NCBI RefSeq assembly: GCF_044704955.1
Contig: NC_091999.1
Span: 11,346,001-11,410,000 of the forward strand
DNA length: 64,000 nucleotides
Source of the DNA: Pristiophorus japonicus
Lineage: Eukaryota
Reading direction: 5' to 3'
Shown: in pieces, positions 21,033 to 62,159 of the stretch
How the letters are laid out: each line of letters opens with the position of its first letter
How positions within the stretch are numbered: position 1 is the first letter of the stretch
The notes under the pieces: model-generated
The model's database searches: none
What the model was told of the DNA's origin: nothing
Seen by the model: the letters and a program-made list of their open reading frames with translations, nothing else
Position numbers and translations under genes: made by a program

Positions 21033-22342
21033 TTGTGTCAACAGTGGTGCTGTGAGACCGTAAGGTGGAGAGGTGGCTGCCAGTGAATGGAAACACGCTG
21101 AGCTGAGCTACAGTCAGTGTTCTTATAGGGGACTGCTTCCGCATTTAGAGACCGGTGGTGGAAATTAAATCCTTGCCTGTTCATTCCGAACGGAAAGCTA
21201 ATGATTGTTAATTGGGTTTGTTGTAGCGGGATCAATGCGCCCCAGAGTGGGTTTAGGGCGGTTTCACAGCCCTGCAGAGTGAGTTGTCGATCGGGTTCAG
21301 GGCCGCGAGGGTGAGGTTTAGAGCGCGATCTCGTTAACAACAGCTCAACACGAACAGTGACTAAAAAACTGTCCTTGCAACTTTCAGTCGTATTACAAAC
21401 AGATGCGGTGGAGAAAACTGAACAATATATGTGAGGTTTTGGTTTGTCTTTCGCCCCTTTAACATCGATCTCCACCATCGGTACAGCTAATGCCTTCAGA
21501 AATCAAATCTCAGGATGTGTCTTTAATTAATGTGTTAACATTTCACCCATCTTCCACATACATCTGCTCACTTGTCCTTTCAAATTGTTAGTATCATAAG
21601 TCAATCTTTGGATGTGATGGATGTCTTTTGTGATGATTATCGCCGATATGCCGACCCAGCCTATTGCACCTTTCAAATACTAATCTTCAATGTATTCCAA
21701 AATGGTACCGCTGTTGTGAAATACGACATGTAATGCAATGCCCGGGGTCTGAGCCAGAAAATGAATATTGCAACCAGCCGCCTTCTGGTGGATATTGTGA
21801 GAACTGTTGAGATGTCGGTGCACATTATATGAGAACTTCTGGACTGAAATTCCTCTCGGGCAGTGGCACGCGACTGGTGGTATCAGATCGGCCACCCGTT
21901 GTACACAGCGCCGGATAATCAGCTCCGCGGACGGATACGAATGTTTTGCCACTGTGTTTATTGATTGCTCTGTCTCAGTTCAAATTAGGGAATCTCGGAC
22001 GGTGCGGTTCTTAATTAATCAGCCGAGCAGCATCAAAGATTTCTATAATTAAACGAAAGACTGAAGGAAGAAAATTCCTACGATTATGGAAAAAGAGTGG
22101 AAACAATTGATGAGAAGGGACAGGCAGGCATAGAAAGCACATCGGAAGGTTAAAGGCACCACAGATGCGTTTGTGCAATGTATTTTTATTATAAAGGTGA
22201 GTTAATATCCCCAAATAATATAATTCCGCCGATGGACATCTCCGATTTTTGTTGAGAGTTTTTGTTTTGTTAACATTTTAAGATTGTCCCTGTGACTCTT
22301 ACTGTGGCGACTGAGTAGCCTCTGATGGTTAGCATTGTAAGT

Positions 22343-22356
22343 GCGCCCTCTGGTGA
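22343..22356 (-). promoter_or_regulatory. CTCF-like motif 24 bp downstream of the RSS
   Basis: TCACCAGAGGGCGC. Confidence 0.65.
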
Positions 22357-22380
22357 GCACGAACTTGAACTCTCAGTGTA

Positions 22381-22540
22381 GGCTTTTGTATGGGAACCAC
22401 AATATCTCAACAGCAGTGTGGGGCTCATTGCCCAGACATACACGGCGGTGTCGGAGATCAGGACATGTTGATTGTTAGCTCAGTAATCTTGGTAGTTTGA
22501 TCGAACGCGGCAGAGAATCAGTCTGTGAAGTCTCGGTTTC
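22381..22540 (-). pseudogene. V 3' fragment (same family as the 43408 V)
   Basis: DFTD*FSAAFDQTTKITELTI...SDTAVYVWAMS. RSS: CACACTG, 24 bp, ACAAAAGCC. The 5' part is replaced by a CR1 fragment. Confidence 0.8.
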
Positions 22541-22880
22541 GGTGTTTTATACAGTTCAAGAATGACCTCCTTGTTCTTCTCTTCCATGCTCCGACTAACA
22601 AAGGCAAGCATTCCATATGCTTTCTTAACTAACTTATCAACCTGGCCTGCTACCTTGAGGGTGCTATGGGTCGGCATTCGAAGGTCCCTGAGTTCCTCCA
22701 CACTTTTCAGTGACCTACATTTAATGAGTATTCCCTTGGCTTGGTCGACCTCCCCAAATGCATTGTCTCACACATATCTGCATTGAAATCAATATGCCAC
22801 TGTTCCGTGCGCCTGACCAGGACATTGATATTGCCCTGCAATCCGCAGTTTTCTTCTTCACTTTCAATCATACTGCTTAT
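22541..22880 (-). mobile_element. CR1 RT C-terminal fragment
   Basis: QVDKLVKKAYGMLAFVSRSMEEKNKEVILELYK. Confidence 0.8.
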
Positions 22881-26971: not shown

Positions 26972-27240
26972 CACTGTGTCGGCTGTATGGTACAGAAATA
27001 CGATGTCGGAGGTGTCAGAGCTTAGTGCTTTGTCGGTCATTAGCTCAGTTATCTTGCTACTTTAATTAAACGTAGAAGATAATCGGTCAATGAAGTCAGG
27101 TTTCGTGGCGTAATATAAACCGTGCACTGCGGAGGCTGCTCGGCGTTTTAGCCCAAGGTCAAATTCAAATATTTCCAACCCAGTGTTAGCACTCACATTT
27201 TAAAAGCTATCTCACCGGCGCCGAGGTCTGTCCACTTATC
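26972..27240 (-). pseudogene. Highly decayed V relic
   Basis: PDFIDRLSSTFN*SSKITEL...SDT..YFC followed by CACAGTG (26978-26972); nonamer lost. Confidence 0.65.
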
Positions 27241-30006: not shown

Positions 30007-30020
30007 CCACAAGGGGGCGG
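30007..30020 (+). promoter_or_regulatory. CTCF-like motif
   Basis: CCACAAGGGGGCGG. Confidence 0.55.
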
Positions 30021-33116: not shown

Positions 33117-35100
33117 GTCTGTGGTCTGTTTTGGCAGAGGCTGTGTCTCAGTGCCTCAGATGTAGCAACAGCACAGAATGCAATTCCTGTGGGCTGAATC
33201 ATTGAGTAACACAATATGGATGGACGCTATTAGGCAGCGTTTTCTGTGTCGGCTTCTGGGAGACTTTTCCAATTAGTTCAATTCCCCGTTTTTCTTCCCC
33301 ATAGCCTTGCAACTGTTTCCTTTCAATTTTTTTCCTGATCCTTTTCAATTCCTTTTTGAAAGTTACACTTGAATCTGCTCTCAGCAACCTTCCAGGCAAT
33401 TCATTGCAGATCACAATAAATCGCTGCAAAAAGAAATTTCTCCTCGTGTAGCCTTTTCTCCCAATTATCTTAAATATGACTTCTTCGAATGCCAGCCCTC
33501 CTGTCAGCAGAATCTATTTCTCCATACCTACGCTATCGAAACTGCTCAGAATTTTTTACATTTCTATTAAATCCCTTCTCAACTTTCTCTGCTCTAATCA
33601 GAACAAACCCAATTTATTTAGTCTCTCCACGTAACTCAAGTCGTTTATCACAGTTAGCATTCTATTATATTTCATCTGCACCCTCGATAAGGCCTCCCCA
33701 TCCTTTCTAATGTTTGCTGCTTATAATTGGACACAATAATCCAGCTGTGGGCTTAGCGGTGATTTAGAAAGGTTCAGTATAACTTCGAGCTTTTTTACTC
33801 TTTGCGTCGATTTATAAAGCCCAGAATGTCAAGTGTTTGTTTTTAACAGCCTCATCAGTTTTACAGATTTGTGGATGAAATAGCGAGACGTGACTGCTGG
33901 GGTGATGGGGAACAGCTGAGTGCAACTTTCTCTGATGGGGCATCTCACCAAAGTGGAGCTTCAGATTTTGGAGAAATGGCAAATTAAATGTTCAGCGCCG
34001 GGAAAGGTTGCTGACGGATTGGACACAAGAGTGAGAGATTGGGCTTGCATTTCAATACATATTGAGCAAGCTGCAGTGTTCCACTGTTGCAAATGGAGCT
34101 AGAGCTAAAACGGTGGCAAAGTTGTGTCTACACATACACGGGCAAAGGTCTTATGTCTTGCAGCATTCAACAGAACATGAACTTAAGTGAATGTTCCACT
34201 TACCACTCTCCCATCACCCCCACCCCCGAACAAAAGTACAGAAGTGAAGTTAACCTTTGATACATGTTTGTTTGCTATTTCCACCAGACATGTTGGGGAA
34301 AAAAAACATCTTTCTCAAACAAAGTGTTAGCGGATGTCTGGAATGTTCAACCCTAAAAGGCGGTGTATGTTGGGGGCCGTTTGGAGCTTTCAAGAGTGAG
34401 ATGGGGAGATCTTTTTTGGGTAAGGATATCGAGTGATATGGAGCAAAGGTGGGTAAATGGGGCTGAGGCACAAATCAGTCTTGATCCAATTCAGTGGGCG
34501 AACAGACTCAAGGGGTTGATTTGCGTGCTCATATTCCTATCGTAGTGTATCGAGGAATCTTAAGAAAAGCGAGTGGATGGGTCTGAGGTGCAGAATAACT
34601 ATGACTTGATTTAATGGCGGAACAGGCTTAGTGGGGTAAGTGGCCTCCCCTGGTCACATTTTCCAGTTGGCAGTTGTTGCGGCCAGAGGGGACACAATCG
34701 GTCACAGATTGAGGGACGGGCGTGGGGCTGGCAGGCTGCGGGTGTTGTCAGTGGCCAGTACTCGCCCAGTGAGCACCACTTATACGTCAGCTTGGTTTCA
34801 TTTTCAAAAGTTGGACTGTGCCACGAATCTCGGTGAGTGATACTAACGGGAATTAAAAGATAAAAGGCGCATTCTGAACAAACACTTTGACAGGCGGGTT
34901 GGGGTTATATATATATGCAACTACGAACAGAGGTCCATTTTCAGGATGTTGAAGGTTTCAATACTCTGCTTTAACTCGTGTCCACACCACGTCCCCACCC
35001 TCGTGGATGGTGATACATATTATGGTTGCGCTCTCAGGCCGTACCCGGTTCCACCATGGAAAATATCCAGGTAATAACTGGTTCGGGTTTGACAGAAATT

Positions 35101-35461
35101 GTGACATTGACACAAGTGGATGCCCAGCCAGCTGCAAGTCTCTCTGTCTTTTCGCTGTATATTGCTCTATGCAGCAGTTACTCCATGCATCCGCTGGGAT
35201 ACTGGCGGTACCAGTATAGTTTGAGAAGGCTGATACTTGTAGCTGTATAATTACAGTGCAATTGAACATCGTTTCCTTTATTTATGAGGTTCCCAGCCAA
35301 TCTTTTTGAAATGGAGTCTCCTCAACATTGTCCTGGAAACGTCCAGAGCTGTATTAAATTAAAAAACGTCACCTCACAGTGTCTATACCCCAGAATCATC
35401 TCATCACCACACCGCCAACATTTACCTAAGAAGTAAATCAGGGCAGTTAAATAAAATACAT
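35101..35461 (-). pseudogene. TCR V pseudogene, 3'-truncated
   Basis: Leader relic at 35461. Exon from 35332 reads GDSISK...VQLHCNYTAT...LYWYRQYP, with stops and no YYC or RSS. Confidence 0.8.
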
Positions 35462-36109
35462 TTCCCCACTACTCGGGGCTGCAATGGGAACGTGCTTGGT
35501 TCGACTAAATAAAACTTCCTTCAATGAATCTTCAGCCCCTTCCAACGGATCAATTCCTCAAATCTCACCGCGTGTGATGTGAAGTGAAATGTCCGAACGT
35601 TCTGTGATTTAAAGTGTTGTTTATCTGTCAATATCCGTCCATGGCTCCGGCAGTGTGGGAAGTATCTGTCTGCCATTCACCTGTAATCTCACCTCAACTC
35701 ACCCACTTTCATTCACTGGGGTAGTTTGTCGAGTTTACCCAAACCGAGTTCAGTGTTGAATTAAGGTGGATCATGATGGTTTTCTACACATCGGATCAAC
35801 CAATTGATATTTTTGTGTTATGGGTACTGACGGTTTTAATATAATGTATGTTTAAGTGTGCAACACAATGGTGTGTAACTTGTGAACTTACTATTTAAGA
35901 GACCAGCAGCTGTGAGGAATAAGTAAAAAAGGAATCGACAAATGTTTGCGGAGAGTTGATGGTGGATTTGAACTGAACAGTTTGAACCTGAAATTGTTTT
36001 CATCAAGAGCTGGGAAGATGTTCAGCAACATCCAGCCTCTCTGCCGATTGGTTCATTGCTGGCAGAGTCAACATGTGACATTGCATCAAGTCTCAGGTCC
36101 AATTGTCGC

Positions 36110-37085
36110 TAATTTAGATGAAAGAATTGAGTGTAATATCTCCAGGTTTGTAGATGACACTAAACTGGGCGGTGGTATAAGCTATGAGAAGGACACTAAG
36201 AGACTGCAGGTTAATTTGGACAGGTTAGTTGAATGGGCAAATGTAATGCAGATGCGGTATAATGTGGATAAATGTGAGGTTATCCACTTTGGGGGCAAAA
36301 ACACGAAGGCAGCATATTATCTCAATGGTGGCAGATTTGGAAAAGGAGGCGTGCAACGAGACCTTGGTGTCATGGTTCATCACTCATTGAAAGTTGGCAT
36401 GCAGGTACAGCAGGCGATGAAGAAGGCAAATGGTATGTTGGCCTTCATAGCTCGGGGATTTGTGTATCGGAGCAGGGAGGTGTTACTGCACTTGTACAGG
36501 GCCTAGGTGAGGCTTCACCTGGAATATTGTGTTCAGTTTTGGTCTCCTAATCTGAGGAAGGACGTTCTTGCTAATGATGGAGTGCAGCGAAGGTTCACCA
36601 GACTGATTCCAGGGATGGCTGGACTGCTGTATGAGGAGAGACTGGATCAATTAGACCTTTATACACTGCAGTTTAGAAGGATGAGATGGGGACTCATAGA
36701 AACGTACATGATTCGGACGGGACTGGACAGCTTAGATGCGGGAAGAATGTTCCCGATGTTGGATGAAGTCCAGAACCAGGGAGTTACAGGCTTAGGATAA
36801 CAGGTAGGCCATTTAGGACTGAGATGAGGAGAAACTTCTTCACTCAAAGAGTTCTTAACCTGTGAAATTCCCTGCCGCAGAGAGTTGTTGATGCTAGTTC
36901 ATTGGATGTATTCAAGAGCTGGTGAGATATGGCCCTAACGGCTAAAGGGATCAAGTGGTATGGAGAGAAAGTGGGAAAGGGGTACTGAGGGAATAATGAA
37001 CCATGATCTTATTGAATGGTGGTGCAGGATCGAAGAGCCGAATTGCCTATTACTGCACCTATTTTCTATATTTCTATGTTTTCTA
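36110..37085 (+). mobile_element. 5'-truncated CR1 (3' end)
   Basis: RFVDDTKLGG...HLEYCVQFWSP and a 3' tail of TTTCTATG-like repeats; absent from the mirror arm. Confidence 0.9.
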
Positions 37086-37658
37086 TTTATCCAAACAACT
37101 CAAAGCTCCTTTATTCTCAAAATTATCCAATCAGCTCACAGCTCTATTATACTCAAATTGGTTGAGGCAGAGTGGGCGAGTATGTGCAGATAAGGGTAGT
37201 GAAGGGAAATAGGTAATGTTCTGCTATCAATGCCGGAGTGTCCCATCAAAGGAGCTGCTCACGGACCATGAGAACTAACCCAGGCGATATGAAGGGGATC
37301 ATAAATGTCAGCCGGTCCTTCGCGATTTGAACACAAATATGCAGTAAATTAGACATATGGAAACTTTTATATAAATAAAATGGGGAGTGATTGATGGGTT
37401 TTAGCCGAATAGGATGATGTGAACAGCGGATGTGCTCAGGTTGAGTTGCCCGTTGCAAACATTTCAAACGTGTTGACTTTAACAAGAAACATTTTCTAAA
37501 TAACCGAACAGTTAAACGTCAGAAACACTGACAACTATTTGGACTTAATCACTGCATTTTGAAAGGTGTTACTTCAACCCTTTAGTTAAATAAACTGAAC
37601 AATGTTCTCAGTCTGTAACTCACCCGGACACTCAAACCAACAACGATCCCGTTTACTA

Positions 37659-37672
37659 CTGCCCTCTAGTGG
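37659..37672 (-). promoter_or_regulatory. CTCF motif (near consensus) downstream of a V
   Basis: CCACTAGAGGGCAG; the mirror copy at 61394-61407 is CCACTCGAGGGCAG. Confidence 0.7.
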
Positions 37673-37865
37673 CGACTACCTGTAAACGTTTTCAAAGAAA
37701 ATTTAGAGAAAACGGTTGGCCACTTCAAGACACAATTGGGTGATACTATAATTCAAAATAAGGAAATGTAAAATTTGCTAAATAGTTATTTCGTATCAGT
37801 CTTCACTACTGTCCGCCACTGTACCTGGCTTCAGCAGCAAAGCCTCTGCTGTACAAAGCCACGGG

Positions 37866-38436
37866 AGTTTCTGTACGACGGTTTAAATTGTTGTCATCAC
37901 TGCAGTCTCAGGACGCAGTACTAAACTGCAGTGTCAGTCAGCTGCAGCCACGAGATATTTCAAGTGGTGAATTTATTCGATGTCTGGAGCTTTGCAGAGA
38001 AACTGGTTCGAGTCAAATGGGCTTTACCTTTAGAAGCACTCGCGTATTTCATTGGAATAATGTCGAGCGATGTTTAGGGTTGCCATTACCAATATAAATC
38101 ATTGCGGCCGCCCCAGGTAGTATTATAGGTGCGGTTTCAAGTCACCACGTCTCCTGCAATCTTAACACTAGGGGATAGCGGCTCAGTTACATAATCTCCA
38201 TGATTCAGATCTGAAATGCATCTTCAACTAGAAAGGCGGGTGCTCAAAATGCAGATTCAAACCAGGTTGTAAATGAGAGTAAAGATGAAATGGGTTTGAT
38301 CCTCCATTATCATCGTCCTATTACCAATATAAAATCTCGGTTACAGCAGTCAGGGGGATATTGCACGTTTACTGGAAAGGAAATACTTACTGAGAAGTGA
38401 TATAACGATGAGGAGCGGTGCGAAACGTCTCCACAT
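37866..38436 (-). pseudogene. TCR V pseudogene with a leader from a different V family
   Basis: Leader MWRRFAPLLIVISLL (38436-38391, donor GTAAGT). The V exon from 38210 is related to the 20425 V and has stops. RSS: TGCAGTG, 23 bp, ACAGAAACT. Confidence 0.82.
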
Positions 38437-38759
38437 GCTGCTCCCTCAATGTTTAACTCAGCAGTAAAGGAAATTCCCTGTCGGAGCAGGTAAGTAAATT
38501 GCCGTTCTACCGCACGGCTAATCTAACCAGTACCAAACCGGGAACATCCGTGGCAATCTCTTCAATAGCTTCGGGAATGCAAGTTGATTCAGAGCGAGTG
38601 CACCAAACGGAAGCTGTGGGTGGCGTGGCGGCAGGCAGTTTTGTCAAACGTGTGATCGACCTGTGTGGAACTGTCGTGCTATCCACACTTTCTCTCACAA
38701 TGGTCATTTTCTTCTTTCTTTCAAATAAACCATCCCAAGGAGACAACGCCCAGCGCTTG

Positions 38760-40535
38760 TGACTTGATCTCAAAGATTGGGAGCATTCAATCGGTTGCCT
38801 CTGCCACTTCGCTTCCTTCTCCTAGCCCACCGGCCAAACTTCCTCTGATGTCCCCCCACCCGGCCCTGGCCTTGAACTCGTGTCTCTCCCCAATTGCTCA
38901 CAGACCTCCCCAATAAAACTCTTCAAAATCATCATGTCCATGAGACCCACTCCCTATTCCCTTGACCATATTCCCAACAGACGGCTCACCAGCCAACTTC
39001 CTTTTCTAGCTCCCATGCTAGCTGACATTGTTAATGGTTCACTCTACTCAGGTACTGTAACCATCTCCTTAAATCTGCCGTCATTACACCTCCTTCGTAA
39101 AATACAACCCTTGACCCCACTGTGCTTGCATGCTATCACCCCATTTCCAACCTCCATTGCCTCTCCAAAGTCCATGAACGTGTTGTCGCCTTTCAAATCT
39201 TTCCCAGATCTTCTTATTTGAATCCCTTTAAACTGGTTTCTGCCCCTATCAGAATACAGCCTCTCATGAAAGTCACAAATTATATCTTTTCTGAATATGA
39301 CAATGGTAAACTACCCCTCCTCGTCTTTCTCGATCCGTTTGCAGCCTTTGACAAGGTTGACCACTCCTCCCTCCTCCAATACCTCTCCAGCATCGTTCAG
39401 CTTGTTGGTACTGCAGTCAGCTCGTTCCCCCATTCTTATCTATCTAAGCGTCGGCAGAAAATCACCTACAACAGCTTCTCTTTCCATTACCGCATTGTTA
39501 CCGCTGTTTTGCCCCAAGGATCTATCATTCACCCCCTGCTATTTCTCATCTATATACTGCCCCTTGACGACTTCATCTGAAAACATTGGAACTGAGATGA
39601 CGACACCCAGCTCTACCTCACTACCACATCTCGCGACCAATCCATGGTCTCGAAATTGTCAGTCTTCTTGTCTGACATCCAATAATGGATCAGCAGAAAA
39701 TTTCTCCAATTAAATATTGGACAGACCAAAATCGTTGACTTTGATCCCGTAACAAACTGTGTTTCCTCACCCGCAACTCTATCCCTCTTCCTAGAATCTG
39801 TCTGAGGCTAAAACAGACGGCTCGCAACCTCGGTGTCAAGTTTTACCCTGAAATGGGTTCTCAATCTCATATCCGTGGCATACCTAAAACTGCCTATTTC
39901 CCCCTCTGTCACAATACCCGTCTCTGTCGCTGTCTCAGCAAATCTGCTGCTGAAACCGTCATCCAGATTTTTGTTACCTGTATACTTTATTATTGCAATG
40001 CGCCCCTGGCTGGCCTACCACATGCTACCCTACACAAAATTGTGGTCATCCAAAACTCAGAAGCCAGTGTTTTAACTCGCAACAAGTCCGATTTACCCAT
40101 CACCCGCTGTGCTCGCAGCCCTACATGGCTCCAGGTTTTGCAATGCGTCGATATCTAAATTCTCATCCTCGTTTACAAATCCCTCCATGACTCCCTGTCT
40201 CTGCAATCTCCTTCAGCTTTCCAGACCACCGAGCTGTCCGTGCTCCTCAAATTATACCCTCTTGATCATTCTTGATTATAACTGATCAACCTTTGATGGC
40301 CGTGACTTCAGCTGCCTGGGCCCTAAGCTCTGGAACTCCTCGCTAAACCACTTCGCCTCTCTACCTCTCTTTCATCCTTGAAGACGCTCCTTAAAACCTA
40401 TTTCATTGACGAAGCTTTTGTTCATCTGCCGTAATTTATTTTTATGTAGCTCGGTATCAAAAGTATATGTTTTGTCTCATAACATTGATGTTCAGCGCTT
40501 TGGGACATTTTGCTCCGTAGAGGCGCTTTATAAAT
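38760..40535 (+). mobile_element. L2-like LINE RT/3' remnant
   Basis: YHPISNL, LVFLD..AAFDKVDH and PQGS...PLLFLIY; 3' end TATAAAT...(TTG)n. Confidence 0.8.
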
Positions 40536-42097
40536 GGAAGCTGTTGTTGTTTTTGCTTTCGAATGTGCGAGAGTTTTAATCAGCATCATATTCCAGTGCA
40601 TGACTGCAATAACATATGGCAGAGTGTCAGAAAGTTCATGTATTAAAAATATATCTCACAATATTAAGTTAAAGCAAACTGTTGAAGTAGATCAGCGGAG
40701 AAAGATTTCAATGTGCTACTTATAGTTAAATACTTCCACACACGTTGAAAATTGTGAATGTATGGAATAATTTCATGGATAGAGTGCGAAGAACATAGCC
40801 TGGAATTGTTTAAGTTAATGTTTGAGGCCTCAGTGGGGCTGGGAGTTAGGATAGCTCTGGATGAATAAGTCAAGACCGGTCAAATGGCCCCAACCATTTC
40901 TTTTGATCAAATAAACTGGAACAAGACAACAGTAGTACCTCGTGGTTGCTTGTAGTCACCACCAGAAGAAAATGGGAGTCGGTGTTAACTACTGGTTTCA
41001 GTGTCGGACTATTTAAAGACTGAAAACGATGTTTGCTTACTGTTTTGAAGCAAGAGGATTAATAAATTCGATTCAGAAACAAAGGCATAACTTTGAAATT
41101 GATATATGTGTGTTTATGTTTTATCACTAATGTTTATTGTGATTTATCAATGTTATTATTACTGTTGATATGTTGACAATATTAGCGTGAAAAGTTCACA
41201 ATCCATCTATCTGGGGAAAGAAACGGGTTCAAACTATGAAGGGAGGTTTTAGGACTGGTATCAGGAAATCTCTTTTCGCACTGAGATGTGCCATATGTGG
41301 GATAAACTTTCAGTTAGAATGCGGAGTAAAATATAGTCAGAAGGCGAGAGCACAGATCTCTCTGGGTGACGGAGCTGTCTCTTACAGATGCGAATAGCAC
41401 AGCTTATTTGTTGTCACGTCGTGAACTGCAACTTATCCGGAACTGATGTCATTAAATTGCATTATGTAATTACCATACCTCGCCACCAAGCGGCGGTGTG
41501 AAACGACGAGCAATAGCGGGCGGCCCAGCTTGAGCTCAGAGACTGTGAGAGCGGGTAGCAATGAGTAACATGGAGTGTCGGCTGCCTGTGGTGGGTAAAC
41601 CCCAAGATACAGCTTGTTTCGTTATTTCGAGAGGACGAAGCCCCTCATTTGGTCCTGAATCAGGTATGTGTCTCCTTGTTAAATCTTCTGAGTATAATAG
41701 CCCAGTACGAGGAGTAACCCAACTTCTGTGTACAATTCGTTTAGCCTCCTTTTCATCTGATCCCATAATACTCTGGATTACAGGGATTCACTGCTGATTT
41801 ACTTTCTGATCTGCATGGACGTGAGCTGTGAGGACGAGCTGAAACAGCTCCCTCGTCGAGTAGTTGTTCATGAGGAGAGAATCGTTTCCTTAAGCCGCAC
41901 CACTGCTGCTTTGTTTAACTTCCTGCGCCGGTACAGACAGCACCGAAATCACATCGTCCAATACCTGGTGATTGGTTAAGCGGGTCCGATTAACGTGGGA
42001 GGTTCACTGCTTCAATCCAGAAAAGCAATGAACTCAGTGGCCTTATTGTGAACGATACGCGAGTGAGACCTATCTCTGAACCATGACACCAGACTGT

Positions 42098-42360
42098 CAT
42101 CATCATCATAGGCGGTCCAACAAAACGAGGATGACTTGTTTCCACGTCAAAAATATGGATGAGTTTACAGGTGTTTCAAGAACGACACGAACTATATCCT
42201 CAAGGGTGGAGGATGCCTGTGCGTGGATTTTTTAAACGTGTGGTGGCCGTTACATACTAACCACCACATGGACTTGACAGTGCTAGGTCTTGAATCAGCG
42301 GCAAGAATTACCCAAGATGACTGGAGACCAGCTCTGCTGCATGGACCTAGTAGACACATA
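42098..42360 (-). mobile_element. Interspersed repeat (RTE-related SINE-like), copy 2
   Basis: (CAT)n tail plus a body shared with 24985-25200. Confidence 0.65.
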
Positions 42361-43280
42361 ATATCCGATCAATGGTCATAATAGTGATAATAGCAGGTCA
42401 GTGCTCGAGATGTTCGTATGATTTCGCTGTATATTATTTTAAGGGAGGCGTGGGTTAATGGCAACTATCATTTCTAGTTTATGATAGTCTATGGTTCAGT
42501 TGTGTGATAGTTTAAGGAGAGAGAAATTAAGAAGCAAACTCTCCAAGCGTAAGCTTGTAATAAGACTAAAATAATTCTTACAGGTGCTCAATGTGTGTCA
42601 AGGTTTAAAATCCACCACGGACATAATGGAGCACCTGTTCACAGTGTAACAAACAAGCGGATGTACGGCACAGAAACCTGCACGGAGGGGAACGCAGCTG
42701 TGTTGTGTTTAGTGCAGAGTTACTTAGAGGGCCTCGGTAATAATAATAGAAGTGTCGAGGGACTGAGCACGGAAAAAATAGGAAATATAGAAGAGACAGA
42801 GGCTTAAAAAAATCTGAAATGAAAAGAATTAGAAACACGGATAGAGGAAAACAAAAAGAAGGCACCAAAGAAAGAATGGGGGAGAGAGAAACATCAATGT
42901 AATAACATGTGTAGTGGATGGCAAATTAGGAGAGCAGGAAAATAGAAATGAAAGAAAGTGAGACATTACAAGTGAGAAATACGTATCTGAAAGATAAGTG
43001 CAAGCCATAAAGAAAAATATTCAGAACTAAAGTAACATGCCCTTTTCTTTAAGTTCACTCATATTACCCTTGCAGCTATTTGCACAGTTGACTTGATTGA
43101 CCCACCTCTCCCCAAATCCCGATGCAGGGAACTGCGCTATAGATAAACTCACTTTACTCAACCTGTTATCCTAACACTGTAAAGTTCTCAGAGTCACAGC
43201 CAGAGGACGCAATGGTCACATGTTTCTATATGCAACCAACTGGAAATTATGGGGACAGAGTTTGCGGCAGCCTTGCCTGT

Positions 43281-43291
43281 AGCTTCCGTTT
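43281..43291 (+). promoter_or_regulatory. Conserved ETS-like V promoter motif
   Basis: AGCTTCCGTTT about 120 bp upstream of the ATG; also at ~23860, 38605-38615 and ~55704-55714. Confidence 0.55.
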
Positions 43292-43407
43292 AGTGCTCTC
43301 GTTCCCTCTTTGACATTGGTGGAACAGCAGTGCAGTGGGCGGGGTAATTTACTTCTGCTCCGACAGAAGATTTCCTGCACTGCAGAGTGACAGATGCAGG
43401 GAGCGTC

Positions 43408-43938
43408 ATGACGAACTGTCGTGCACCGCTGCTCATCATTATATCACTTCTCAGTAAGTATTTCCTTCCAAGTAAAAATCTTTTCTCCGCCCGACGGCTT
43501 TAACCCAGGTGTAATTATTGGTGAAATGACGGTGATGATGATTATGTTGATTGCGATGATAATGATGATGTCTATATCTGTTATTTTATGTTAGAATGGA
43601 GCAACCAAGACACAGTCGATCAGACGGTTCCTGCAATGGCAGTTGAAGAGGAAAGTAATGTCACACTGACCTGCACGTTGAAAACAAACGATAATATCCC
43701 ATTTGTTTACTGGTACTTTCACCAAGCCGGGCAACCTCTACAATACGTGTTTAAAACTATTGTAGGGATAGTAACCAGGAGTCGCAGCTTCACTGACAGA
43801 TTCTCTACTACGTTTAATAAAACGACCAAGACTACTGAGCTAACGATCGGCAATACCCTGACCTCCGACACCGCTGTGTATTTCTGTGCCATGAGCTACA
43901 CAATGATGCAGAGATATAGCAGATCCCGTACAAAAACT
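43408..43938 (+). CDS. Apparently intact TCR alpha/delta-type V segment
   Basis: Leader MTNCRAPLLIIISLL (43408-43453, GTAAGT), phase-1 acceptor at 43594, open V exon (DTVDQT...VTLTC...WYFHQAGQP...DTAVYFCAMSY). RSS: CACAATG (43899), 24 bp, ACAAAAACT (43930-43938). Confidence 0.9.
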
Positions 43939-43962
43939 CACACTGAGAGTGCGAGTTCGTGC

Positions 43963-43976
43963 TCAGCAGAGGGCAC
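43963..43976 (+). promoter_or_regulatory. CTCF-like motif 24 bp downstream of the RSS
   Basis: TCAGCAGAGGGCAC. Confidence 0.6.
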
Positions 43977-45181
43977 TTTAACTCCGATTAACAGAAGCAA
44001 TAATTCAGCCTCCACCAGTGAGACAGAGAGAGAGAGAGAGAGAGATCTGTGAGGAACATATGGCTATTAACCTGCTGATGCTCTCTAGCACAAATAATTC
44101 CGAATGAATCTTAAACAACCCGGATTTGGCGAGGTTACCTCGAACACCTTCAACCGGTCAATATAATCCAATATTACAAGCCAAACTTTATATCGTTCTT
44201 CTGCCTTTCTTTTATTCATGTTCTATGTAATATTATAACTTGCAGATATATGTATATATATATATGTATGTATATATATTTATTTGTACACACACACATA
44301 AATATATATATACAAAAAGAGGGAGAGAGAGAGAGAAATTGAGAGAGACACATTCACACAAAGGCATTTTACAAGAGCCCAACACCTACATTAGCCCGCT
44401 ATGCAATGGTACAAATCTTGCGAAGGTTTGCAATTTTCCAGTATGAAATGGAATTTGAAAAAGGGAACTTGATACATACTTGAAAAGGAATAATTTTCAG
44501 GGCAATGGAGAAGGAGCAGTGCCGTGGCAGTAACGGCACGGGCACGATTTGTCAATAGTCTCCTTATATGCTGTAAGATTCCATGTTTCTATGAAACAAG
44601 CTGAGAAGGAAGCACAAGCAGATAACAGTGACCAAGGGGAGCAATTAGCATGTTGTAACTGGCATTGTCTAATTGGTGGTACCGTGGAGCGCATTTTCCT
44701 ATCTTCTCAGTCGCGGTTTGGTACTTCAAAAAGTTCAGTTACTTTCCCTGGTAACGGAATGGCAGCTCAGTACTGTCTATATAAATGCTGTTGCTGCAAG
44801 CAATGAACTAAATAATTAAGGAAGCAGGAAAATTAATCTGTCATCTGAGTGCCGCAAATCGTAAATCATTCCACGAATATTTCCTATGGTCAATCTCTAA
44901 ATGAACCTAAAATACGTTCCTTTTCAAAAGAAGTTGTTGAAAAAAAGGGAAATGACGAGCAGAGGAATCGACAGTGAAACATTTCGGATGCTGCTGCATG
45001 CACGGCGTCAAGGGCAATGATGGTGTAACATTGTTACAAGCGAATGTGAGATATTTGCAGAGTTACTTCCATCGTTATGCCTGTCACAGGGTTAAATAGC
45101 TAAAGCTGGACCGGTTCTACTGGCAGTTTTTTGATGGATTAGTGAAGGGACCAATGCTCATATGGTGAGCCACGGACAGCG

Positions 45182-45655
45182 ATGTGTTTCACTGCTTCTT
45201 TCACTGTGGTGTTGGTACTCTCTCTGCTGTTTAAGTGCATGTGGAATCCGAGTACAAAATCACTAACGGGTCCGGTTAGTGCAGCGGATATTTGTAAATG
45301 TTCAATTCCTCTTCCAGCCAAAAGCATTGGCCGCAATTCCGTGCATCATGAGTATTCGACCAGGTGGAATGAGAAACGGAGACGTTGAATTATAGTTTAA
45401 CAACAACAAATACAATCTCTCAGCTTTTCTGGTACAGGCAGCTTCCTGGCTGGGGCATGGTAAACGTGTTGATTATCACCAAATATCACACTTTCCCAGC
45501 CGACTTCGTCAAGAACCGTTTTAGAGCAGGACTGAGGGCAGAGGAGAACACGGTTCAGCTGAGAGTTCATGAAGAGGATCTGTCACACGCCGCCGTGCAT
45601 TACTGCGCTCAGGACCCACGACTGCACAGCTCCTTGCCCTTCCTGTACAAAAACT
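45182..45655 (+). pseudogene. TCR V pseudogene
   Basis: Leader MCFTASFTVVLVLSLL has a mutated donor (TTAAGT). Frameshifted FR1, FWYRQLPG, HAAVHYCAQD. RSS: CACGACT, 23 bp, ACAAAAACT. Confidence 0.85.
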
Positions 45656-45939
45656 GCAGCACACCGTGTGGGAATAGAATAGTCTGTAGCCACAAGTCCG
45701 ACCTCTGATGGTCTGAATAGGACATTTATTGCCAGGACAGAATAAGGATTGCACTAAACTAGCATACAAATGAGATTCCCCGCTCTGTTTGTGATTTAAT
45801 TAATTTATAGAGAGCAGAGTAAATCTTCCCCTTCCGTGCACCAGCAGAAGGTTAATCAAACCGTATCTTCCGTCAACCATCTCAGTCTGATTAGTGACAG
45901 TGAGTGAAATAAACAGAATAACTGGGAGTGCAGTCAGAG

Positions 45940-46500
45940 CCAGGTCCATGGCATCACGGGTGGATGAGCTGCACAGTGGGAGAGGAAGAAGAATTGAATG
46001 CAATGGTTGTAGGGGATTCGTGAGTTAAGGGAGCAGACAGGCGATTCTGCGGCCACTGACATGACACCAGGAAAGTATGTTGCCTCCCTGGTGCCAGTGG
46101 CAAGAAGGTAACCAAGCGGCTGCAGTGCATTCTGGGGTGGGAGGTGGAATAGCCAGAGGTCGGGTTCCTTATCGGTACCAATGTCATAGGTAGAAAGAAG
46201 GATTTGGTCCTGCAGGCAGAGTTCAGGGAGCTGGGAGAGATATAAAATTGCAGGAGCTTACAGGTAGTAATTTCCGGAATACATCGGATGCCATGTGCTG
46301 GTGAGTACAGAAATAGGACAGAGCCGATGAATGCATGGCTGGAGAGATGCTGCAGAAGGGAGAGCTTTAGATTCCTGAGGCACTGGGTCTGTTTTGGGCG
46401 AGGCAGGACCTGTACAAGCTGACAGGTTGCGGCTCAACGGAGACTGGACCAGCTTGCCAGGGGGATGGCAACCTGTAAATAGATTCAGAAGGGAGAGAAG
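45940..46500 (+). mobile_element. CR1 ORF1 (esterase) fragment
   Basis: VVGDS...RRFCG...CCLPGA; mirror of 52575-53140. Confidence 0.8.
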
Positions 46501-52600: not shown

Positions 52601-53140
52601 ACAGGACTCCATCCCCCTGCCAAGATGGTCCCGTCTCTGTTGAGGTGCAAACCTTCAGCTTGTACAGGTCCTACCTGCTCACAAAATGGACCCAATGCCG
52701 CCAGAATCTAAAGCCCTCTGTCTTGCACCATCTCTCCAGCCATGCATTCATCTGCTCTGTCTTCCTATTCCTGTACTCACGAGCACGTGGCATTCGGAGT
52801 GATCCGGATTATAGTGCCTTTGCGATCCTGCGTTTTTATCTCTCTCCTAGCTCCCAAAACTTTGCCTGCAGGTCCACATCCTTCTTTCTATCAATGACAT
52901 TGGTACCGATATGGAACAAGACCTCTGGCTGTTCCACCTCTCAGCCCAGAATGCACTGCGGCTGCTTGGTGACATTCTTGTCACTGGGAACAGGGAGGCA
53001 ACATACTATCCTGCAGTCACGTCGGTGGCCGCAGAATTGCCTGTCTGCTCCCTTAACTGTCGAATCCCCTACAACCATTGCACTTCCACTCTTCCTCCTC
53101 TCCCACTGTGCAGCTGCTCCAGTCGTGATGTCGTGGACCT
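49700..53140 (-). mobile_element. Long decayed CR1 LINE (ORF1 esterase to 3' tail)
   Basis: ATAGAATC-like tail at ~49700, RT/endonuclease remnants, and ORF1 at 52600-53140. Confidence 0.85.
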
Positions 53141-53407
53141 GGCCCTGACTGCACTCCCCGATGTTCTGTTTATTTCCCTCATGGTCACTAATCAGACTGA
53201 GGTGGTTGACAGAAGATATAATTTGATTAGCCTTCTGCTAGTGCACAATAGGGGAAGATTTACTCTGGTCTCATATTATTAATGAAATCCCAAACAGAGC
53301 TGGGAATCGCGTCTGTACGCTAGTTTAGTGCAATCATTATTCTGTCCTGGCAATAACTGTCCTATTCAGACAATCGGAGGTCGTACGTGTGGCTACAGAC
53401 TGTTCTA

Positions 53408-53839
53408 TTCACACACAGTAGTGCACGGTGGCGTCTGACAGATCCTTCTCATAAACTCTCAGTTGAACCGTGTTCTCCTCTGCCCTAAATCTTGCTCTAA
53501 AATGGTCCTTGGCGATAACGAATGGGGAAGTATGATATCTGTTGATAATCAATACGTTGACCACGGCCCAACCAGGAAGCTGCCTGCACCAGAAAAGCTG
53601 AGGGATTGTATTTGTTGTTGTTAAACTACAATTCTACATCACCGTTTCTCCTTCCACCTGGTCGAATACTCATGATACACGGAATTGCGGCCAATGCTTT
53701 TGGCTGGAAGAGAAATTGAACATTTACAAATTTCCGCTGCACTAACCGGACCCGTTAATGATTTTGCACTCGGATTGCACATGTCCTTACGCAGCACAGA
53801 GAGCACCAACAAAAAACTGAAAGAAACAGGGGAAAACAT
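53408..53839 (-). pseudogene. TCR V pseudogene (mirror of 45182), RSS deleted
   Basis: Leader MFSPVSFSFLLVLSVL with GT donor. The V ends VHYCV* and is joined directly to the downstream flank. Confidence 0.82.
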
Positions 53840-55024
53840 CGCTGTCCATGGCTCACAATATGAGCATCGCTCCCTTCACTACTGGAGAAAAAGCTGCCAG
53901 TGGAGCCTGTTCAGCTTGAGCTATTTAACCCTGTGACAGTCATAACGATGGAAGTAATTCTGCAAATATCTCGCATCCGTTTGTAACAATGTTATACCAT
54001 CATTGCTCTGGACCCTGTACATGCAGCAACATCCGAAATGTTTAATTGCAGATTTCTCTGCTCGGCATTTCCCTACTTTTTGAACAACTTAATTTCAGAA
54101 AGAAGGTATTTTAGGTTCATTTAGAGAGTGACCATATGAATCATTCGTGGAATGATTTAAGATTCGCGGCACTCAGAGGACAGATACATTTTCCTACTTC
54201 CTTAGTTATTTAGTTCATTGCTTGCAGTAGCAGCATTTAAATAGACAGTTCTGAGCTGCCTTTCGCGTTACTAGGGACAGTAACTCAACTTTTGAAATAC
54301 CAAACCGCGACTGAGAAAATAGGAAAATGCAATCCACGGTACCACCAATTAGACAATACCACATACTACACGCTGAGTGCACCCCTTGGTCACGGTTATC
54401 TGCTTGTGCTTCCTTCTGAGCTTGTTTCATAGAAACATAGAATCTTACAGCACATAAAGAGACTATTGTCCAATCATGCCCGTGCCGTTAGTGTCACAGC
54501 ACTACTCCTTCCCCGTTGCCCTGAAAATTATTCATTTTCAATTATATATCCAGTTCCATTTTTCAAATTCCTTTTTATACTGGAAAATTGCAAACCCTCA
54601 CAAGATTTGTACTATTGTATAGAGGGATAACATATGTGTTGGGCTCTTGTGAATTGAATGGAGCACCTTTGTGTGAATGTTTCTCTCTCAATTTCTCGCT
54701 CTCTCCCTCTTTTTGTATATATATTTTTATGTGTTTGTGTACAAATAAATATATATACATACATATGTATACATATATCTAAAAGCGATAATATTATACA
54801 GAAAATGAATAAAAGAAAGGCAAAAGAAGAATATAAAGTTTGGCTTTTAATATTGAATTATATTGACTGGTTGAAGGTATTTGAGGTAACCTCGCCACAT
54901 CCGTGCTGTTTAAGATTAATTTGGAATTATTTCTGCTGGAGCGCATCAGCAGGTTATTGGACATATGTTCCTCGCAGATTTCTCTCTCTCTCTGTCTCAC
55001 TTGCTTCCGTTTATCGGAGTTAAA

Positions 55025-55038
55025 GCGCCCTCTGCTGA
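55025..55038 (-). promoter_or_regulatory. CTCF-like motif 24 bp downstream of the RSS
   Basis: TCAGCAGAGGGCGC. Confidence 0.65.
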
Positions 55039-55062
55039 GCACTAACTGGAACTCTTAGTGTG

Positions 55063-55587
55063 AGTTCTTGTATGGGATTTGCGATTACTCTGCAGCAGTG
55101 TGGTGCTCATGCCACAGGAATACACAGCGGTGTCGGAGATCAGGATATTTCTGATCGTTTGTTCAGTAATGTTGGTCGTTTTATTAAATGTAGTAGAGAA
55201 TCTGTCAGTAAAGGTGCGACTCCTGCTTACTATCCCTACAATAGTTTTAACCACATACTGCAGAGGCTGCCAGGCTTGGTGAAAGTACAGTGCACAAATG
55301 GGCTATTTTCATTTGTTTTCAACGTGCAGGTCAGTGTTACTTTTCTCTTCAAATGCCATTACATGAACCGTCTGTTCGATTGTGTCTTGGTGGCTCCATT
55401 CTAACATAAAATAACAGAAATAGACATCATCATCATCGCAATCAACATAATCATCATCATCACCATCATTTCATGAATAATAACACCTCGGTTATAGCCG
55501 TCGGGCAGAGAATGGATTTTTACTTGGTCGGACATACTTACTGAGAAGTGACATGTTGATGAGCAGCGGTGCGAGACAGTTCCTCAT
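55063..55587 (-). pseudogene. TCR V pseudogene (mirror of the intact 43408 V)
   Basis: Leader MRNCLAPLLINMSLL, frameshifts in FR1/FR2, DTAVYSCGMS. RSS: CACACTG, 24 bp, ACAAGAACT. Confidence 0.88.
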
Positions 55588-60290: not shown

Positions 60291-60627
60291 AAGACAATCA
60301 GGTCACAAGTGCTGGGCTTTATCTCCTTGGGATTGATTATTTGAAAGAAAGATGAAAGTGACCATTGTGAGAGAAAGTGTGGACAGCACGACAGTTGCAC
60401 ACAAGTGCATCCCACGTGTGACAAAACTGCCTGCTGCAGTGCAGCCTCACCTTCCTTTTGGTGCGCTCGCTCTGAATCAACTTGCCTTCCCCATGTTATT
60501 GAAGAGATTGCCACGGAGGTTCCCGGTTTGGTACTGGTTAGATCAGCAGTGCAGTAGAGCGGCAATTTGCTTTCCTGCTCCGACAGGGAATTTACAGCAC
60601 TGCTGAGTTACGCATTCAGGGAGTAGC

Positions 60628-61199: not shown

Positions 61200-62100
61200 C
61201 CCGTGGCTTAGTACATCACAGGCTTTGCCTGCTGAAGCCGGGAATAGCGGCGAACAGATGTGAAGACCGAAACGAAATAACTATTTAGCAAATCTTCCCT
61301 TTCCATATTTTGAATTACTGGATCACCCAATTGTGTCTTTACGTGGCCAACCGTTTTCTCTTAAATTTCTTTGGAAAAGTTTACAGGTAGTCGCCACTCG
61401 AGGGCAGTAGTAAATGGATTCGTTGTTGGTTTGAATGTCCCGGTGAGTTACAGACTGATAACACTGTTCAGTTTATTTAACTAAAGGGTTGAAGTAACAC
61501 CTTTCAAAATGCAGTGATTAAGTTCAAATGGATGTCTGCTTAAATGTTATGTTATTTTGAACATGTTAGTTGATGTCAACACAATTTAAATGTTTGCAAT
61601 GGGCAACTCAACCTGAGCACATCCGCTGTTCACTTCATACTATTCGGCTGAAACCCGTCAATCACTCCCCATTTCATTCATATGAAAGTTTCTATTTGTC
61701 TAATTTATTGCATGTTTGTGTTCAAATCGCTAAGGAACGGCTCACCTTTATGATACCCTTTATATTGTCTGTGGATAGTTCTCATGGTCCGTGAGCTGCT
61801 CCTTTGATGGGACCCTCCGGCATTTATAGCAGAACCTTAGCTATTTCCCTTCACTGCCCCCATCTGCACAAACTCGCCCTCTCTGCCAAAACTAATATCA
61901 GAACAATACAGCTGTGAGCTGATTTGATAAATTAGAGACAAATGTCCCCGAGACTTGATTGAATGTCACATGTTGACTCTGCCAGGAATGAACCAGTCGG
62001 CAGAGAGGCTGGATATCACTCAACATCTTCCCAGCTCTTGACTGAAACAATTTCAGGGTCAACCCATTCAATTCAAATCCACCATCAACTCTCTGCAAAT

Positions 62101-62159
62101 ATGTTGGCTGTTACTTTATTACTTATTCCTCACAGCTGCTGCTATCTCTAATGGTAAGT
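62101..62159 (+). pseudogene. Orphan V promoter/leader exon
   Basis: ATG...frameshifted hydrophobic leader...GTAAGT. The upstream region is homologous to that of the 28802 V, and no matching V exon follows. Confidence 0.55.

What the first reader, a model, noticed from the sequence alone, without database searches (positions are those of the whole stretch)
43899..43976. V family with a fixed RSS + CTCF module: CTCF-like motif exactly 24 bp after the nonamer in all three copies
Seen: three paralogues carry TCA(C/G)CAGAGGGC(G/A)C starting 24 bp 3' of the nonamer, co-oriented with the V. They lie at 22343-22420 (-), 43899-43976 (+) and 55025-55102 (-). The 22 kb copy is outside the inverted duplication and is otherwise well diverged. 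Known: RSS-proximal CTCF elements in mouse Igh proximal VH genes promote RAG scanning via cohesin loop extrusion, whereas mammalian Tcra V CTCF sites are mostly at promoters. Inference: a shark TCR V family may use an Igh-like RSS-adjacent CTCF stall, implying ancient or convergent loop-extrusion control of V(D)J recombination.
Basis: partly seen in the sequence, partly recalled or inferred. Interest (0 to 1): 0.8.

Follow-up and report, generated by a model that had tools for sequence, protein, structure and literature searches.

The report
CTCF-type motif behind shark V-gene RSS
Three related T-cell-receptor V gene segments of a cartilaginous fish carry a CTCF-type binding motif on the gene's strand exactly 24 bases past their recombination signal, much as mammalian antibody heavy-chain V genes do, but only sequence evidence supports it here, not binding or function.

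Summary
V7 is the only intact member. V8 is its pseudogene partner in an 11-kb inverted duplication. V2 is a diverged FR3-only remnant outside that duplication. Each has heptamer, 24-nt spacer, nonamer, a 24-nt linker, then TCA(G/C)CAGAGGGC(A/G)C on the V strand.

Each motif is one mismatch from the published CTCF consensus CCASYAGRKGGCRS. The window holds 7 such matches against 0.67 expected, all on the strand of the neighbouring V. That is about 4 independent origins, and two of them share no flank homology.

V2 matches V7/V8 at 86-93% in the motif and 83-88% in the linker. The figures are 62-67% in the RSS spacer, 75-78% in FR3 and 40% just beyond the motif. Both motif substitutions keep the consensus.

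The closest known system is the RSS-associated CTCF element of mouse and human proximal VH genes, 17-19 bp past the nonamer.

Weak points:
- There is no binding data.
- Two of the three carriers are pseudogenes.
- The linker is as conserved as the motif.
- Five other V lineages in the window lack such a site.

This scan has already noted the same module in many other windows of this genome, and one earlier follow-up reached the same verdict.

The parts
43408..43453 (+). V7 (family A) leader exon, ATG to GT donor
   Evidence: Read directly from the sequence. The open frame ends at ctca|gtaagt.
43595..43898 (+). V7 V exon, intact TCR alpha/delta-type V domain ending in ...DTAVYFCAMS
   Evidence: The translation has no stops. 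Pfam V-set, E = 7.7e-14. Best PDB matches are Vdelta1 and TCR alpha.
43899..43938 (+). V7 RSS: heptamer CACAATG, 24-nt spacer, nonamer ACAAAAACT
43939..43962 (+). V7 24-nt linker, which begins with a lone heptamer-like CACACTG
   Evidence: It matches V2 at 21 of 24 positions.
43963..43976 (+). V7 CTCF-type core motif TCAGCAGAGGGCAC
   Evidence: One mismatch to CCASYAGRKGGCRS. Score 14.5 on the approximate PWM over 43960-43978.
55103..55401 (-). V8 V exon, a family A pseudogene with stops and a frameshift; inverted-duplication partner of V7
55063..55102 (-). V8 RSS: CACACTG, 24-nt spacer, ACAAGAACT
55025..55038 (-). V8 CTCF-type motif TCAGCAGAGGGCGC, 24 nt past the nonamer
   Evidence: PWM score 15.3.
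22421..22550 (-). V2 FR3-only remnant of family A. The conserved Cys codon reads TGG, and the 5' part is replaced by a LINE ORF2-like fragment.
22381..22420 (-). V2 RSS: CACACTG, 24-nt spacer, ACAAAAGCC
22343..22356 (-). V2 CTCF-type motif TCACCAGAGGGCGC, 24 nt past the nonamer
   Evidence: PWM score 16.1.
37659..37672 (-). Perfect-consensus CTCF motif CCACTAGAGGGCAG, 193 nt past the nonamer of family B pseudogene V6 and co-oriented with it
   Evidence: PWM score 22.9.
61394..61407 (+). Duplicate of the V6 site behind V9, 194 nt past the nonamer, with one extra mismatch (CCACTCGAGGGCAG)
21778..21791 (-). CTCF-type motif CCACCAGAAGGCGG between V2 and V1. It lies 589 nt past the V2 nonamer and 853 nt upstream of the V1 ATG, co-oriented with both.
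30007..30020 (+). CTCF-type motif CCACAAGGGGGCGG, 682 nt past the RSS of a V remnant and about 0.96 kb upstream of the V4 exon, co-oriented with both. Its flanks are not homologous to those of the 21778 site.
35100..46318 (.). Left arm of the inverted duplication (carries V6 and V7). The right arm is 52763-62935 (V8, V9), about 87% identical.

Best explanation
The 14-mer is a genuine CTCF-binding element that travels with this V family as part of a fixed module: V exon, 24-spacer RSS, 24-nt linker, CTCF core, all on one strand.

Inferred mechanism, by analogy with mammalian proximal VH genes: in thymocytes, CTCF bound here has its cohesin-blocking N-terminal side facing away from the V. Cohesin reeling V-region chromatin past a RAG-loaded J or DJ recombination centre would pause with the adjacent RSS held at the centre. 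That would raise the chance that this V is cut and joined.

Shown here: motif quality, exact spacing, orientation, enrichment in the locus, and retention in a diverged paralogue and in about ten further genomic copies.

Inferred only: CTCF occupancy, cohesin stalling and any effect on V usage.
For: (1) Each site is one mismatch from CCASYAGRKGGCRS. The window has 7 such hits against 0.67 expected. An approximate PWM at score 14 or more gives 9 against 0.99, with a maximum of 5 in 300 shuffles.

(2) After collapsing duplicates there are still about 4 independent sites (Poisson p about 0.005). All are co-oriented with the flanking V genes, although V orientation flips five times across the window. 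Sites 21778 and 30007 share no flank homology, so they are not one copied block.

(3) The spacing is exactly 24 nt in all three copies.

(4) V2 against V7/V8: motif 86-93% and linker 83-88% identical, against spacer 62-67%, FR3 75-78% and the next 25 nt 40%. The two substitutions in the motif fall at the degenerate S and R positions.

(5) Laying genomic contigs at 80% likeness or more put about 12 contigs of the X3 run (this count includes the window's own copies) across the linker and motif. The only well-supported difference inside the core is A to G at 43975, which improves the match.

(6) Precedent: mouse VH RSS-associated sites with core GACCAGCAGGGGGC lie 17-19 bp past the nonamer, more than 98% in one orientation, and are bound in vitro and in vivo (PMC6746451). 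Mutating the VH81X element lowers use of that V (PMC7930373).

(7) The CTCF motif and its orientation code operate in cartilaginous fish (skate, PMC10115646). The motif is nearly identical from lamprey to human (PMC5504073).
Against: - No binding, accessibility, Hi-C or repertoire data were available.
- The first C of the CCA triplet is T in all three copies, a rare letter at a well-conserved position. The scores (14.5-16.1 of a possible 27.8) are moderate.
- Two of the three carriers are pseudogenes, whereas in mouse the pseudogenes typically lack the element.
- The linker is as conserved as the motif, unlike mouse VH, where only the linker length is kept. The block may therefore be conserved as a whole, or homogenised by gene conversion.
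- Five other V lineages in the window have no comparable site within 400 nt: V1, the 28-kb V, V4/V5, and the 27-kb and 45/53-kb remnants.
- V genes of both orientations carry co-oriented motifs, so some must face away from any single recombination centre.
- The spacing is 3-5 nt longer than in mouse.
Confidence: 0.45

Rival explanations
1. It is a real CTCF site with a different job. It would act as a per-gene architectural or insulating element, separating neighbouring V genes, setting germline transcription or chromatin domains, or contributing to locus compaction. It would not act as a stall that presents the adjacent RSS to RAG.
For: - The motif survives behind dead V genes (V2, V8).
- An even better motif sits 193-194 nt behind the pseudogene pair V6/V9.
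- Two further co-oriented motifs lie 0.85-0.96 kb upstream of the next V. This resembles the '~800 bp upstream' class in mouse VH, for which an insulating role was suggested (PMC6746451).
- V genes of both orientations carry co-oriented motifs, which a single-direction scanning model does not need.
Against: The exact 24-nt tie to the nonamer in a diverged paralogue is hard to explain by a role that does not involve the RSS. An insulator could sit anywhere between genes.
Confidence: 0.25
2. It is a passive passenger. The CTCF-like string arose once in the flank of the family ancestor and has been copied along with the V gene. It is not bound, or binding has no consequence.
For: - The three copies are paralogues, so they represent one origin.
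- The linker is as conserved as the motif.
- Homology to V2 resumes about 40 nt beyond the motif.
- Other paralogues align on past the motif to about 44012.
- Two carriers are pseudogenes.
- All copies share a mismatch at a strong position of the motif.
Against: - A consensus match on the V strand within 100 nt after a nonamer is expected in about 0.005 of windows with this many V lineages (rate).
- CTCF-type motifs are enriched several-fold in the window, in non-homologous contexts, and always co-oriented with the V genes.
- Other windows of this genome are reported to show the same arrangement in other V families (leads not checked here).
- The motif substitutions preserve the consensus.
Confidence: 0.2
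3. The conserved 38-nt block serves something other than CTCF. It could be an extended RSS flank that affects RAG binding or cleavage (it starts with a lone heptamer-like CACACTG abutting the nonamer), or a site for another zinc-finger or lymphoid factor.
For: The whole linker is conserved, not just the core. The heptamer-like CACACTG/TACACTG/CACACTA directly follows the nonamer in all three copies. Another first-reader note describes the same feature 1.35 Mb away.
Against: No 12- or 23-spaced nonamer follows the lone heptamer. The best-conserved stretch coincides with the G-rich CTCF core. Independent CTCF-type motifs elsewhere in the window lack this linker.
Confidence: 0.1

Closest known systems
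RSS-associated CTCF-binding elements of mouse and human proximal VH genes (7183/Q52 type; e.g. the VH81X CBE)
   Same: - A CTCF core lies on the V strand at a fixed short distance past the nonamer of a 23-type RSS.
- The occurrence is family-specific.
- The sub-consensus is similar: mouse GACCAGCAGGGGGC against shark GCTCAGCAGAGGGC.
- A CpG follows the G run at the same position in about half of the mouse sites and in two of the three copies here.
- These sites coexist with a second class of sites about 0.8 kb upstream of V leaders.
(PMC6746451)
   Different: - The locus is TCR alpha/delta-type, not IgH, and the animal is a cartilaginous fish, not a mammal.
- The distance is 24 nt to the CCA-equivalent. 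That is 22 nt in the frame of the mouse 14-mer, against 17-19.
- The RSS spacer is 24 nt.
- The linker sequence is conserved, whereas in mouse it is not.
- Pseudogenes keep the element here, whereas in mouse they mostly lack it.
- Binding and function are untested.
CTCF sites of the mouse Tcra/Tcrd V array
   Same: The locus type is the same. There are many V-associated sites, mostly pointing one way relative to the V genes: 129 of 144 point toward J-C (PMC5859386).
   Different: The mouse sites are described as mostly upstream of V promoters or intergenic, not next to the RSS. In this window only sites 21778 and 30007 fit that pattern.
Generic vertebrate CTCF boundary sites (JASPAR MA0139.1-type motif)
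   Same: The core sequence is the same. Orientation-dependent loop-extrusion barriers are documented in a cartilaginous fish (PMC10115646).
   Different: Those sites mark TAD boundaries hundreds of kb apart. Here the motifs recur every few kb and are tied to gene segments.

Membership tests
RSS-associated CTCF-binding element (mammalian proximal VH type) | Match to the CTCF core consensus | tested here: met
   All three copies are one mismatch from CCASYAGRKGGCRS. Approximate PWM scores are 14.5-16.1 of 27.8. The mismatch is T for the first C of the CCA triplet.
RSS-associated CTCF-binding element (mammalian proximal VH type) | Fixed short distance downstream of the RSS nonamer | tested here: met
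   Exactly 24 nt in V7, V8 and V2. The mouse value is 17-19 nt to a 14-mer that starts 2 nt earlier, and human values are 19 or 48. The distance is fixed here but 3-5 nt longer.
RSS-associated CTCF-binding element (mammalian proximal VH type) | Motif on the strand of V transcription | tested here: met
   All three copies, and all seven consensus hits in the window, are co-oriented with the adjacent V.
RSS-associated CTCF-binding element (mammalian proximal VH type) | Motif points toward the D/J recombination centre, convergent with anchors there | not testable with these tools
   The J and C segments are outside the window and their side is unknown to me. V genes of both orientations carry the motif, so not all can be convergent.
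RSS-associated CTCF-binding element (mammalian proximal VH type) | Motif conserved much more than the nonamer-to-motif spacer sequence | tested here: not met
   The linker is 20-21 of 24 identical between V2 and V7/V8, and the motif 12-13 of 14. The two are equally conserved.
RSS-associated CTCF-binding element (mammalian proximal VH type) | Present at functional family members and typically absent at pseudogenes | tested here: not met
   One intact carrier (V7) and two pseudogene carriers (V8, V2). The sample is small.
RSS-associated CTCF-binding element (mammalian proximal VH type) | Bound by CTCF and cohesin in lymphocyte precursors, and raises use of the adjacent V | not testable with these tools
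   No ChIP, CUT&RUN, ATAC or repertoire data could be reached. The runs found were contigs of genomic DNA and small unlabelled runs.
TCR alpha/delta-type V gene segment with 23-type RSS | V-set immunoglobulin domain closest to TCR alpha/delta V, split leader, heptamer-spacer-nonamer at the 3' end | tested here: met
   Pfam V-set, E = 7.7e-14. The top solved-structure matches are human Vdelta1 and TCR alpha chains. Leader, GT..AG intron and RSS were read. The spacer is 24 nt rather than 23.

The most novel reading that the evidence does not exclude
The co-oriented CTCF element about two helical turns past the nonamer is an ancestral feature of 23-RSS V segments. It would be shared by descent between shark TCR alpha/delta V genes and mammalian VH genes. 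Loop-extrusion-guided presentation of RSSs to RAG would then date to the origin of jawed-vertebrate antigen-receptor loci, possibly with a direct steric relation between bound CTCF and RAG.
Probability: 0.12. Interest if true: 0.85.

Novelty: new member of a known kind. Interest (0 to 1): 0.5.

Why it matters
RSS-adjacent CTCF elements are the best-understood device by which loop extrusion biases V gene choice. They have been described for mammalian IgH, and I found no paper on CTCF at shark antigen-receptor loci in the held library.

If the shark sites are bound, the same device serves a T-cell-receptor locus in the oldest living lineage with V(D)J recombination. The question of whether cohesin-driven RAG scanning is ancient or evolved repeatedly would then become testable. 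The natural material is already there: family members with an intact motif, a decayed motif or no motif, and V genes in both orientations.

If the sites are not bound, the case is a caution that a good motif at a fixed position can be carried along by gene duplication alone.

Tried and rejected
- **Cross-species test, word search.** The word-index protein search with the V7 exon found nothing. With the V1 exon it found one Chiloscyllium punctatum protein at 61% identity.
- **Metagenome scan.** A gapped pattern (heptamer, nonamer, CTCF core) found 0 matches in the metagenome collection. This is uninformative, because shark DNA is not expected there.
- **Laid contigs.** They gave only the best-supported differences, so no full per-position conservation profile across paralogues could be built.
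- **One duplicated 'upstream' element?** I tested whether sites 21778 and 30007 are copies of one element. The flanks do not align, so I rejected this.
- **Homology ending at the motif?** I first thought homology between V2 and V7 stops exactly at the motif. It resumes about 40 nt later, so there is no sharp duplication boundary.
- **CTCF upstream (M2) motif.** I considered whether the conserved linker contains it. No matrix was at hand and the papers read do not print it, so this is untested.
- **Decayed site in families B and D.** A shared GCAGAGGCT about 17 nt past their nonamers could be a decayed relative of the site. A shared 7-mer is not beyond chance, so I did not pursue it.
- **Bacterial promoter/terminator scan.** This is irrelevant to a vertebrate locus.
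- **Large profile search.** I did not run it, because no claim here rests on protein relatives.

Full report
**What is there.** The window is a V-gene array with segments on both strands.

A six-frame scan, an RSS scan and tblastn with three intact V exons find these intact V genes:
- V1, about 20.9-20.46 kb (-), family B
- V3, about 24.4-24.0 kb (-)
- a V at 27.9-28.2 kb (+)
- V7, 43.4-43.9 kb (+), family A

They also find these pseudogenes and remnants:
- V2, 22.55-22.38 kb (-)
- a remnant at 27.09-27.0 kb (-)
- a remnant at 29.16-29.28 kb (+)
- V4 and V5, a tandem pair ending at 31.28 and 33.08 kb (+)
- V6, 38.2-37.9 kb (-)
- remnants at 45.5 kb (+) and 53.5 kb (-)
- V8, 55.4-55.1 kb (-)
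- V9, 60.86-61.16 kb (+)

A large inverted duplication, about 35.1-46.3 kb against 52.8-62.9 kb at about 87% identity, pairs V6 with V9 and V7 with V8. The V exons are V-set domains. V7's nearest solved relatives are human Vdelta1 and TCR alpha chains, so 'TCR alpha/delta-type V' is justified. The joined leader plus V product was neither built nor searched.

**The observation.** It is exact. In V7, V8 and V2 the order is heptamer, 24-nt spacer, nonamer, 24-nt linker, then TCA(G/C)CAGAGGGC(A/G)C, all on the V strand (coordinates under 'parts'). V7 is intact: it has an ATG, a GT..AG intron, the conserved Cys and Trp residues, and no stops. V8 has stops and a frameshift. V2 keeps only FR3, its Cys codon reads TGG, and upstream lies a LINE ORF2-like fragment.

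**Is it more than chance?** The published genome-wide consensus CCASYAGRKGGCRS is quoted in PMC6746451.
- With at most one mismatch it matches 7 places in the window against 0.67 expected. None of 100 dinucleotide-preserving shuffles reached 7.
- Duplicates inflate these counts. 43963 and 55025 are one duplication pair, 37659 and 61394 are another, and 22343 is a paralogue of the first pair. That still leaves about four independent sites (Poisson p about 0.005).
- From the same rate, a match on the V strand within 100 nt after a nonamer is expected about 5e-4 times per V lineage. That is about 0.005 for the roughly nine lineages in the window.

All seven hits lie on the strand of the flanking V genes, although V orientation changes five times along the window. 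Sites 21778-21791 (-) and 30007-30020 (+) have non-homologous flanks, so they are separate occurrences.

**Conservation.** The table gives identity between V2, the only copy outside the duplication, and V7/V8.

| Segment | Identity, V2 vs V7/V8 |
|---|---|
| FR3 | 75-78% |
| RSS spacer | 62-67% |
| Nonamer | 67-78% |
| Linker | 83-88% |
| Motif | 86-93% |
| Next 25 nt | 40% |

Recognisable homology returns about 40 nt further on. The two substitutions within the 14-mer, G/C at the S position and A/G at the R position, both keep the consensus. Under random substitution that has a probability of roughly 0.05 by my estimate. So the motif is better kept than the RSS spacer and the distal flank, but no better than the linker.

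Because V2 is dead, its retention of the motif cannot reflect selection for use of V2 itself.

**Other copies in the genome.** I laid contigs of two genomic runs of the same organism on 43350-44150 at 80% likeness or more.
- About 20 contigs covered FR3 and the heptamer, and about 12 of the X3 run covered the linker and motif; this count includes the window's own copies.
- In that stretch the well-supported differences from V7 are at 43951, 43953, 43975, 43980 and 43989. Only 43975 lies in the core, and the majority letter there is G, giving GGGCGC, the better CTCF match. V7's A is the CpG-to-CpA variant.
- The tool lists only the best-supported differences, so this is not a full conservation profile.
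- A 170-nt contig from a small run (X6) follows a family A-like V to its coding end (43896) and then continues with unrelated letters. A rearranged transcript would look like this. It is a weak hint that the family is used.

**Not universal.** V1, the 28-kb V, V4/V5 and two remnants have nothing scoring above 5 on the V strand within 400 nt of their coding ends. V3 and the 29-kb remnant have only weak hits, 9.7 and 11.1.

Family B pseudogenes V6 and V9 carry a much better motif 193-194 nt past the nonamer. It is a perfect consensus in V6, scoring 22.9. The two remaining sites lie 589-682 nt past one RSS and 0.85-0.96 kb before the next V.

**Comparison with what is known.** Ciccone et al. [quoted passage not shown]
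- The core GACCAGCAGGGGGC lies 'precisely 17-19 bp' past the nonamer. Human values are 19 or 48 bp.
- More than 98% of the sites are in one orientation.
- Whether a V carries a site follows its family.
- A CpG follows the G run in about half of the sites.
- The sites are bound in vitro and in vivo.
- A second class of sites lies about 800 bp or more upstream of leaders.

Mutating the VH81X element lowers use of that V, and repairing a pseudogene's element raises its use (review PMC7930373). [quoted passage not shown]

The shark module has the same logic and a similar sub-consensus. It differs in five ways:
- The spacing is 22 nt in the mouse 14-mer's frame.
- The RSS spacer is 24 nt.
- The linker sequence is conserved.
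- Pseudogenes keep the motif.
- The locus type is TCR rather than IgH.

Using the mammalian motif for a shark is reasonable. Skate TAD boundaries are enriched for MA0139.1 motifs with an orientation bias (PMC10115646). Lamprey, chicken and human CTCF bind nearly identical motifs (PMC5504073).

**Mechanism and odds.**

| Reading | Odds | Basis |
|---|---|---|
| Bound CTCF element that pauses cohesin next to the RSS and favours use of that V | 0.45 | most likely reading |
| Real CTCF site with an architectural or insulating role | 0.25 | favoured by its survival behind dead genes and by the other positional classes in the window |
| Unbound passenger copied with the gene | 0.20 | favoured by the single origin of the three copies and the equally conserved linker |
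| Some other factor, or an extended RSS flank | 0.10 | the linker begins with a lone heptamer-like CACACTG |

**Limits.** The metagenome pattern scan found nothing. The position of the J and C segments relative to the window is unknown to me.

**Earlier notes of this scan.** The same module has been noted in many other windows of this genome. One follow-up, s1-876491, reached the same verdict: motif evidence only. Those notes are leads that I did not verify. If they hold, the module is a locus-wide feature spanning more than 1.3 Mb and several V families. That would strengthen the case well beyond what this window shows.

**Verdict.** This is a probable new member, in a shark TCR locus, of the known class of RSS-associated CTCF elements. 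I rate it of moderate interest until binding or cross-species evidence exists.

Noticed in passing
window 37659-37672 (-) and 61394-61407 (+): The strongest CTCF-type motif in the window (perfect consensus CCACTAGAGGGCAG, approximate PWM 22.9) lies 193-194 nt past the degenerate RSS of the family B pseudogene pair V6/V9, co-oriented with them. The V9 copy has lost a strongly conserved A.
   Followed up: partly
window 21778-21791 (-) and 30007-30020 (+): Two consensus CTCF motifs in non-homologous flanks, each co-oriented with the V genes around it. They lie 0.85-0.96 kb upstream of the next V (V1 leader ATG at 20924; V4 exon at about 30968). This recalls the '~800 bp upstream' class of mouse VH sites.
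   Followed up: partly
window 43355-43515 vs 60575-60735, and 38329-38489 vs 55480-55640: The 5' region, leader exon and start of the intron are 76-78% identical between family A genes (V7/V8) and family B pseudogenes (V6/V9). The intact family B gene V1 has an unrelated leader. V6/V9 therefore look like chimeras of an A-type leader and a B-type V exon.
   Followed up: no
window 26925-27094 (-) compared with 22245-22342 (-): In a family A-like FR3 remnant, the coding end abuts a perfect heptamer CACAGTG. What follows is homologous to DNA lying about 45 nt beyond V2's CTCF motif. This copy therefore lacks the spacer, nonamer, linker and CTCF block (about 115 nt). V2 itself has a second 'V-end plus heptamer'-like stretch at that place. 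Whether this is a deletion between repeats or the older state was not resolved.
   Followed up: partly
window 43939-43945, 55062-55056, 22380-22374: A lone heptamer-like CACACTG / CACACTA / TACACTG directly abuts the nonamer in all three copies. No nonamer follows it at 12 or 23 nt.
   Followed up: partly
window 22561-22871 (-): A LINE ORF2-like (reverse-transcriptase tail) fragment with stops replaces the 5' two-thirds of V2. It was judged by eye from the translation and no family scan was run.
   Followed up: partly
window 43788-43896 (contig 18 of run X6): A 170-nt contig from a small run matches a family A paralogue (17 differences in 109 nt) up to the V coding end. It then continues with 14 unrelated letters, as a rearranged V-J transcript would.
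   Followed up: no
window 42640-42678 (+): A good isolated 23-type RSS (CACAGTG, 23 nt, ACAGAAACC) has no recognisable V coding sequence upstream.
   Followed up: no
window 43975: The only intact carrier, V7, has A where V8, V2 and most paralogue contigs have G. This is loss of the CpG after the G run by a deamination-type change, at a position where the CTCF consensus allows either purine.
   Followed up: partly
window 44018-44046 and 54976-54992: A (GA)n microsatellite of different length lies about 45 nt past the motif in V7 and V8. Contigs break there.
   Followed up: no
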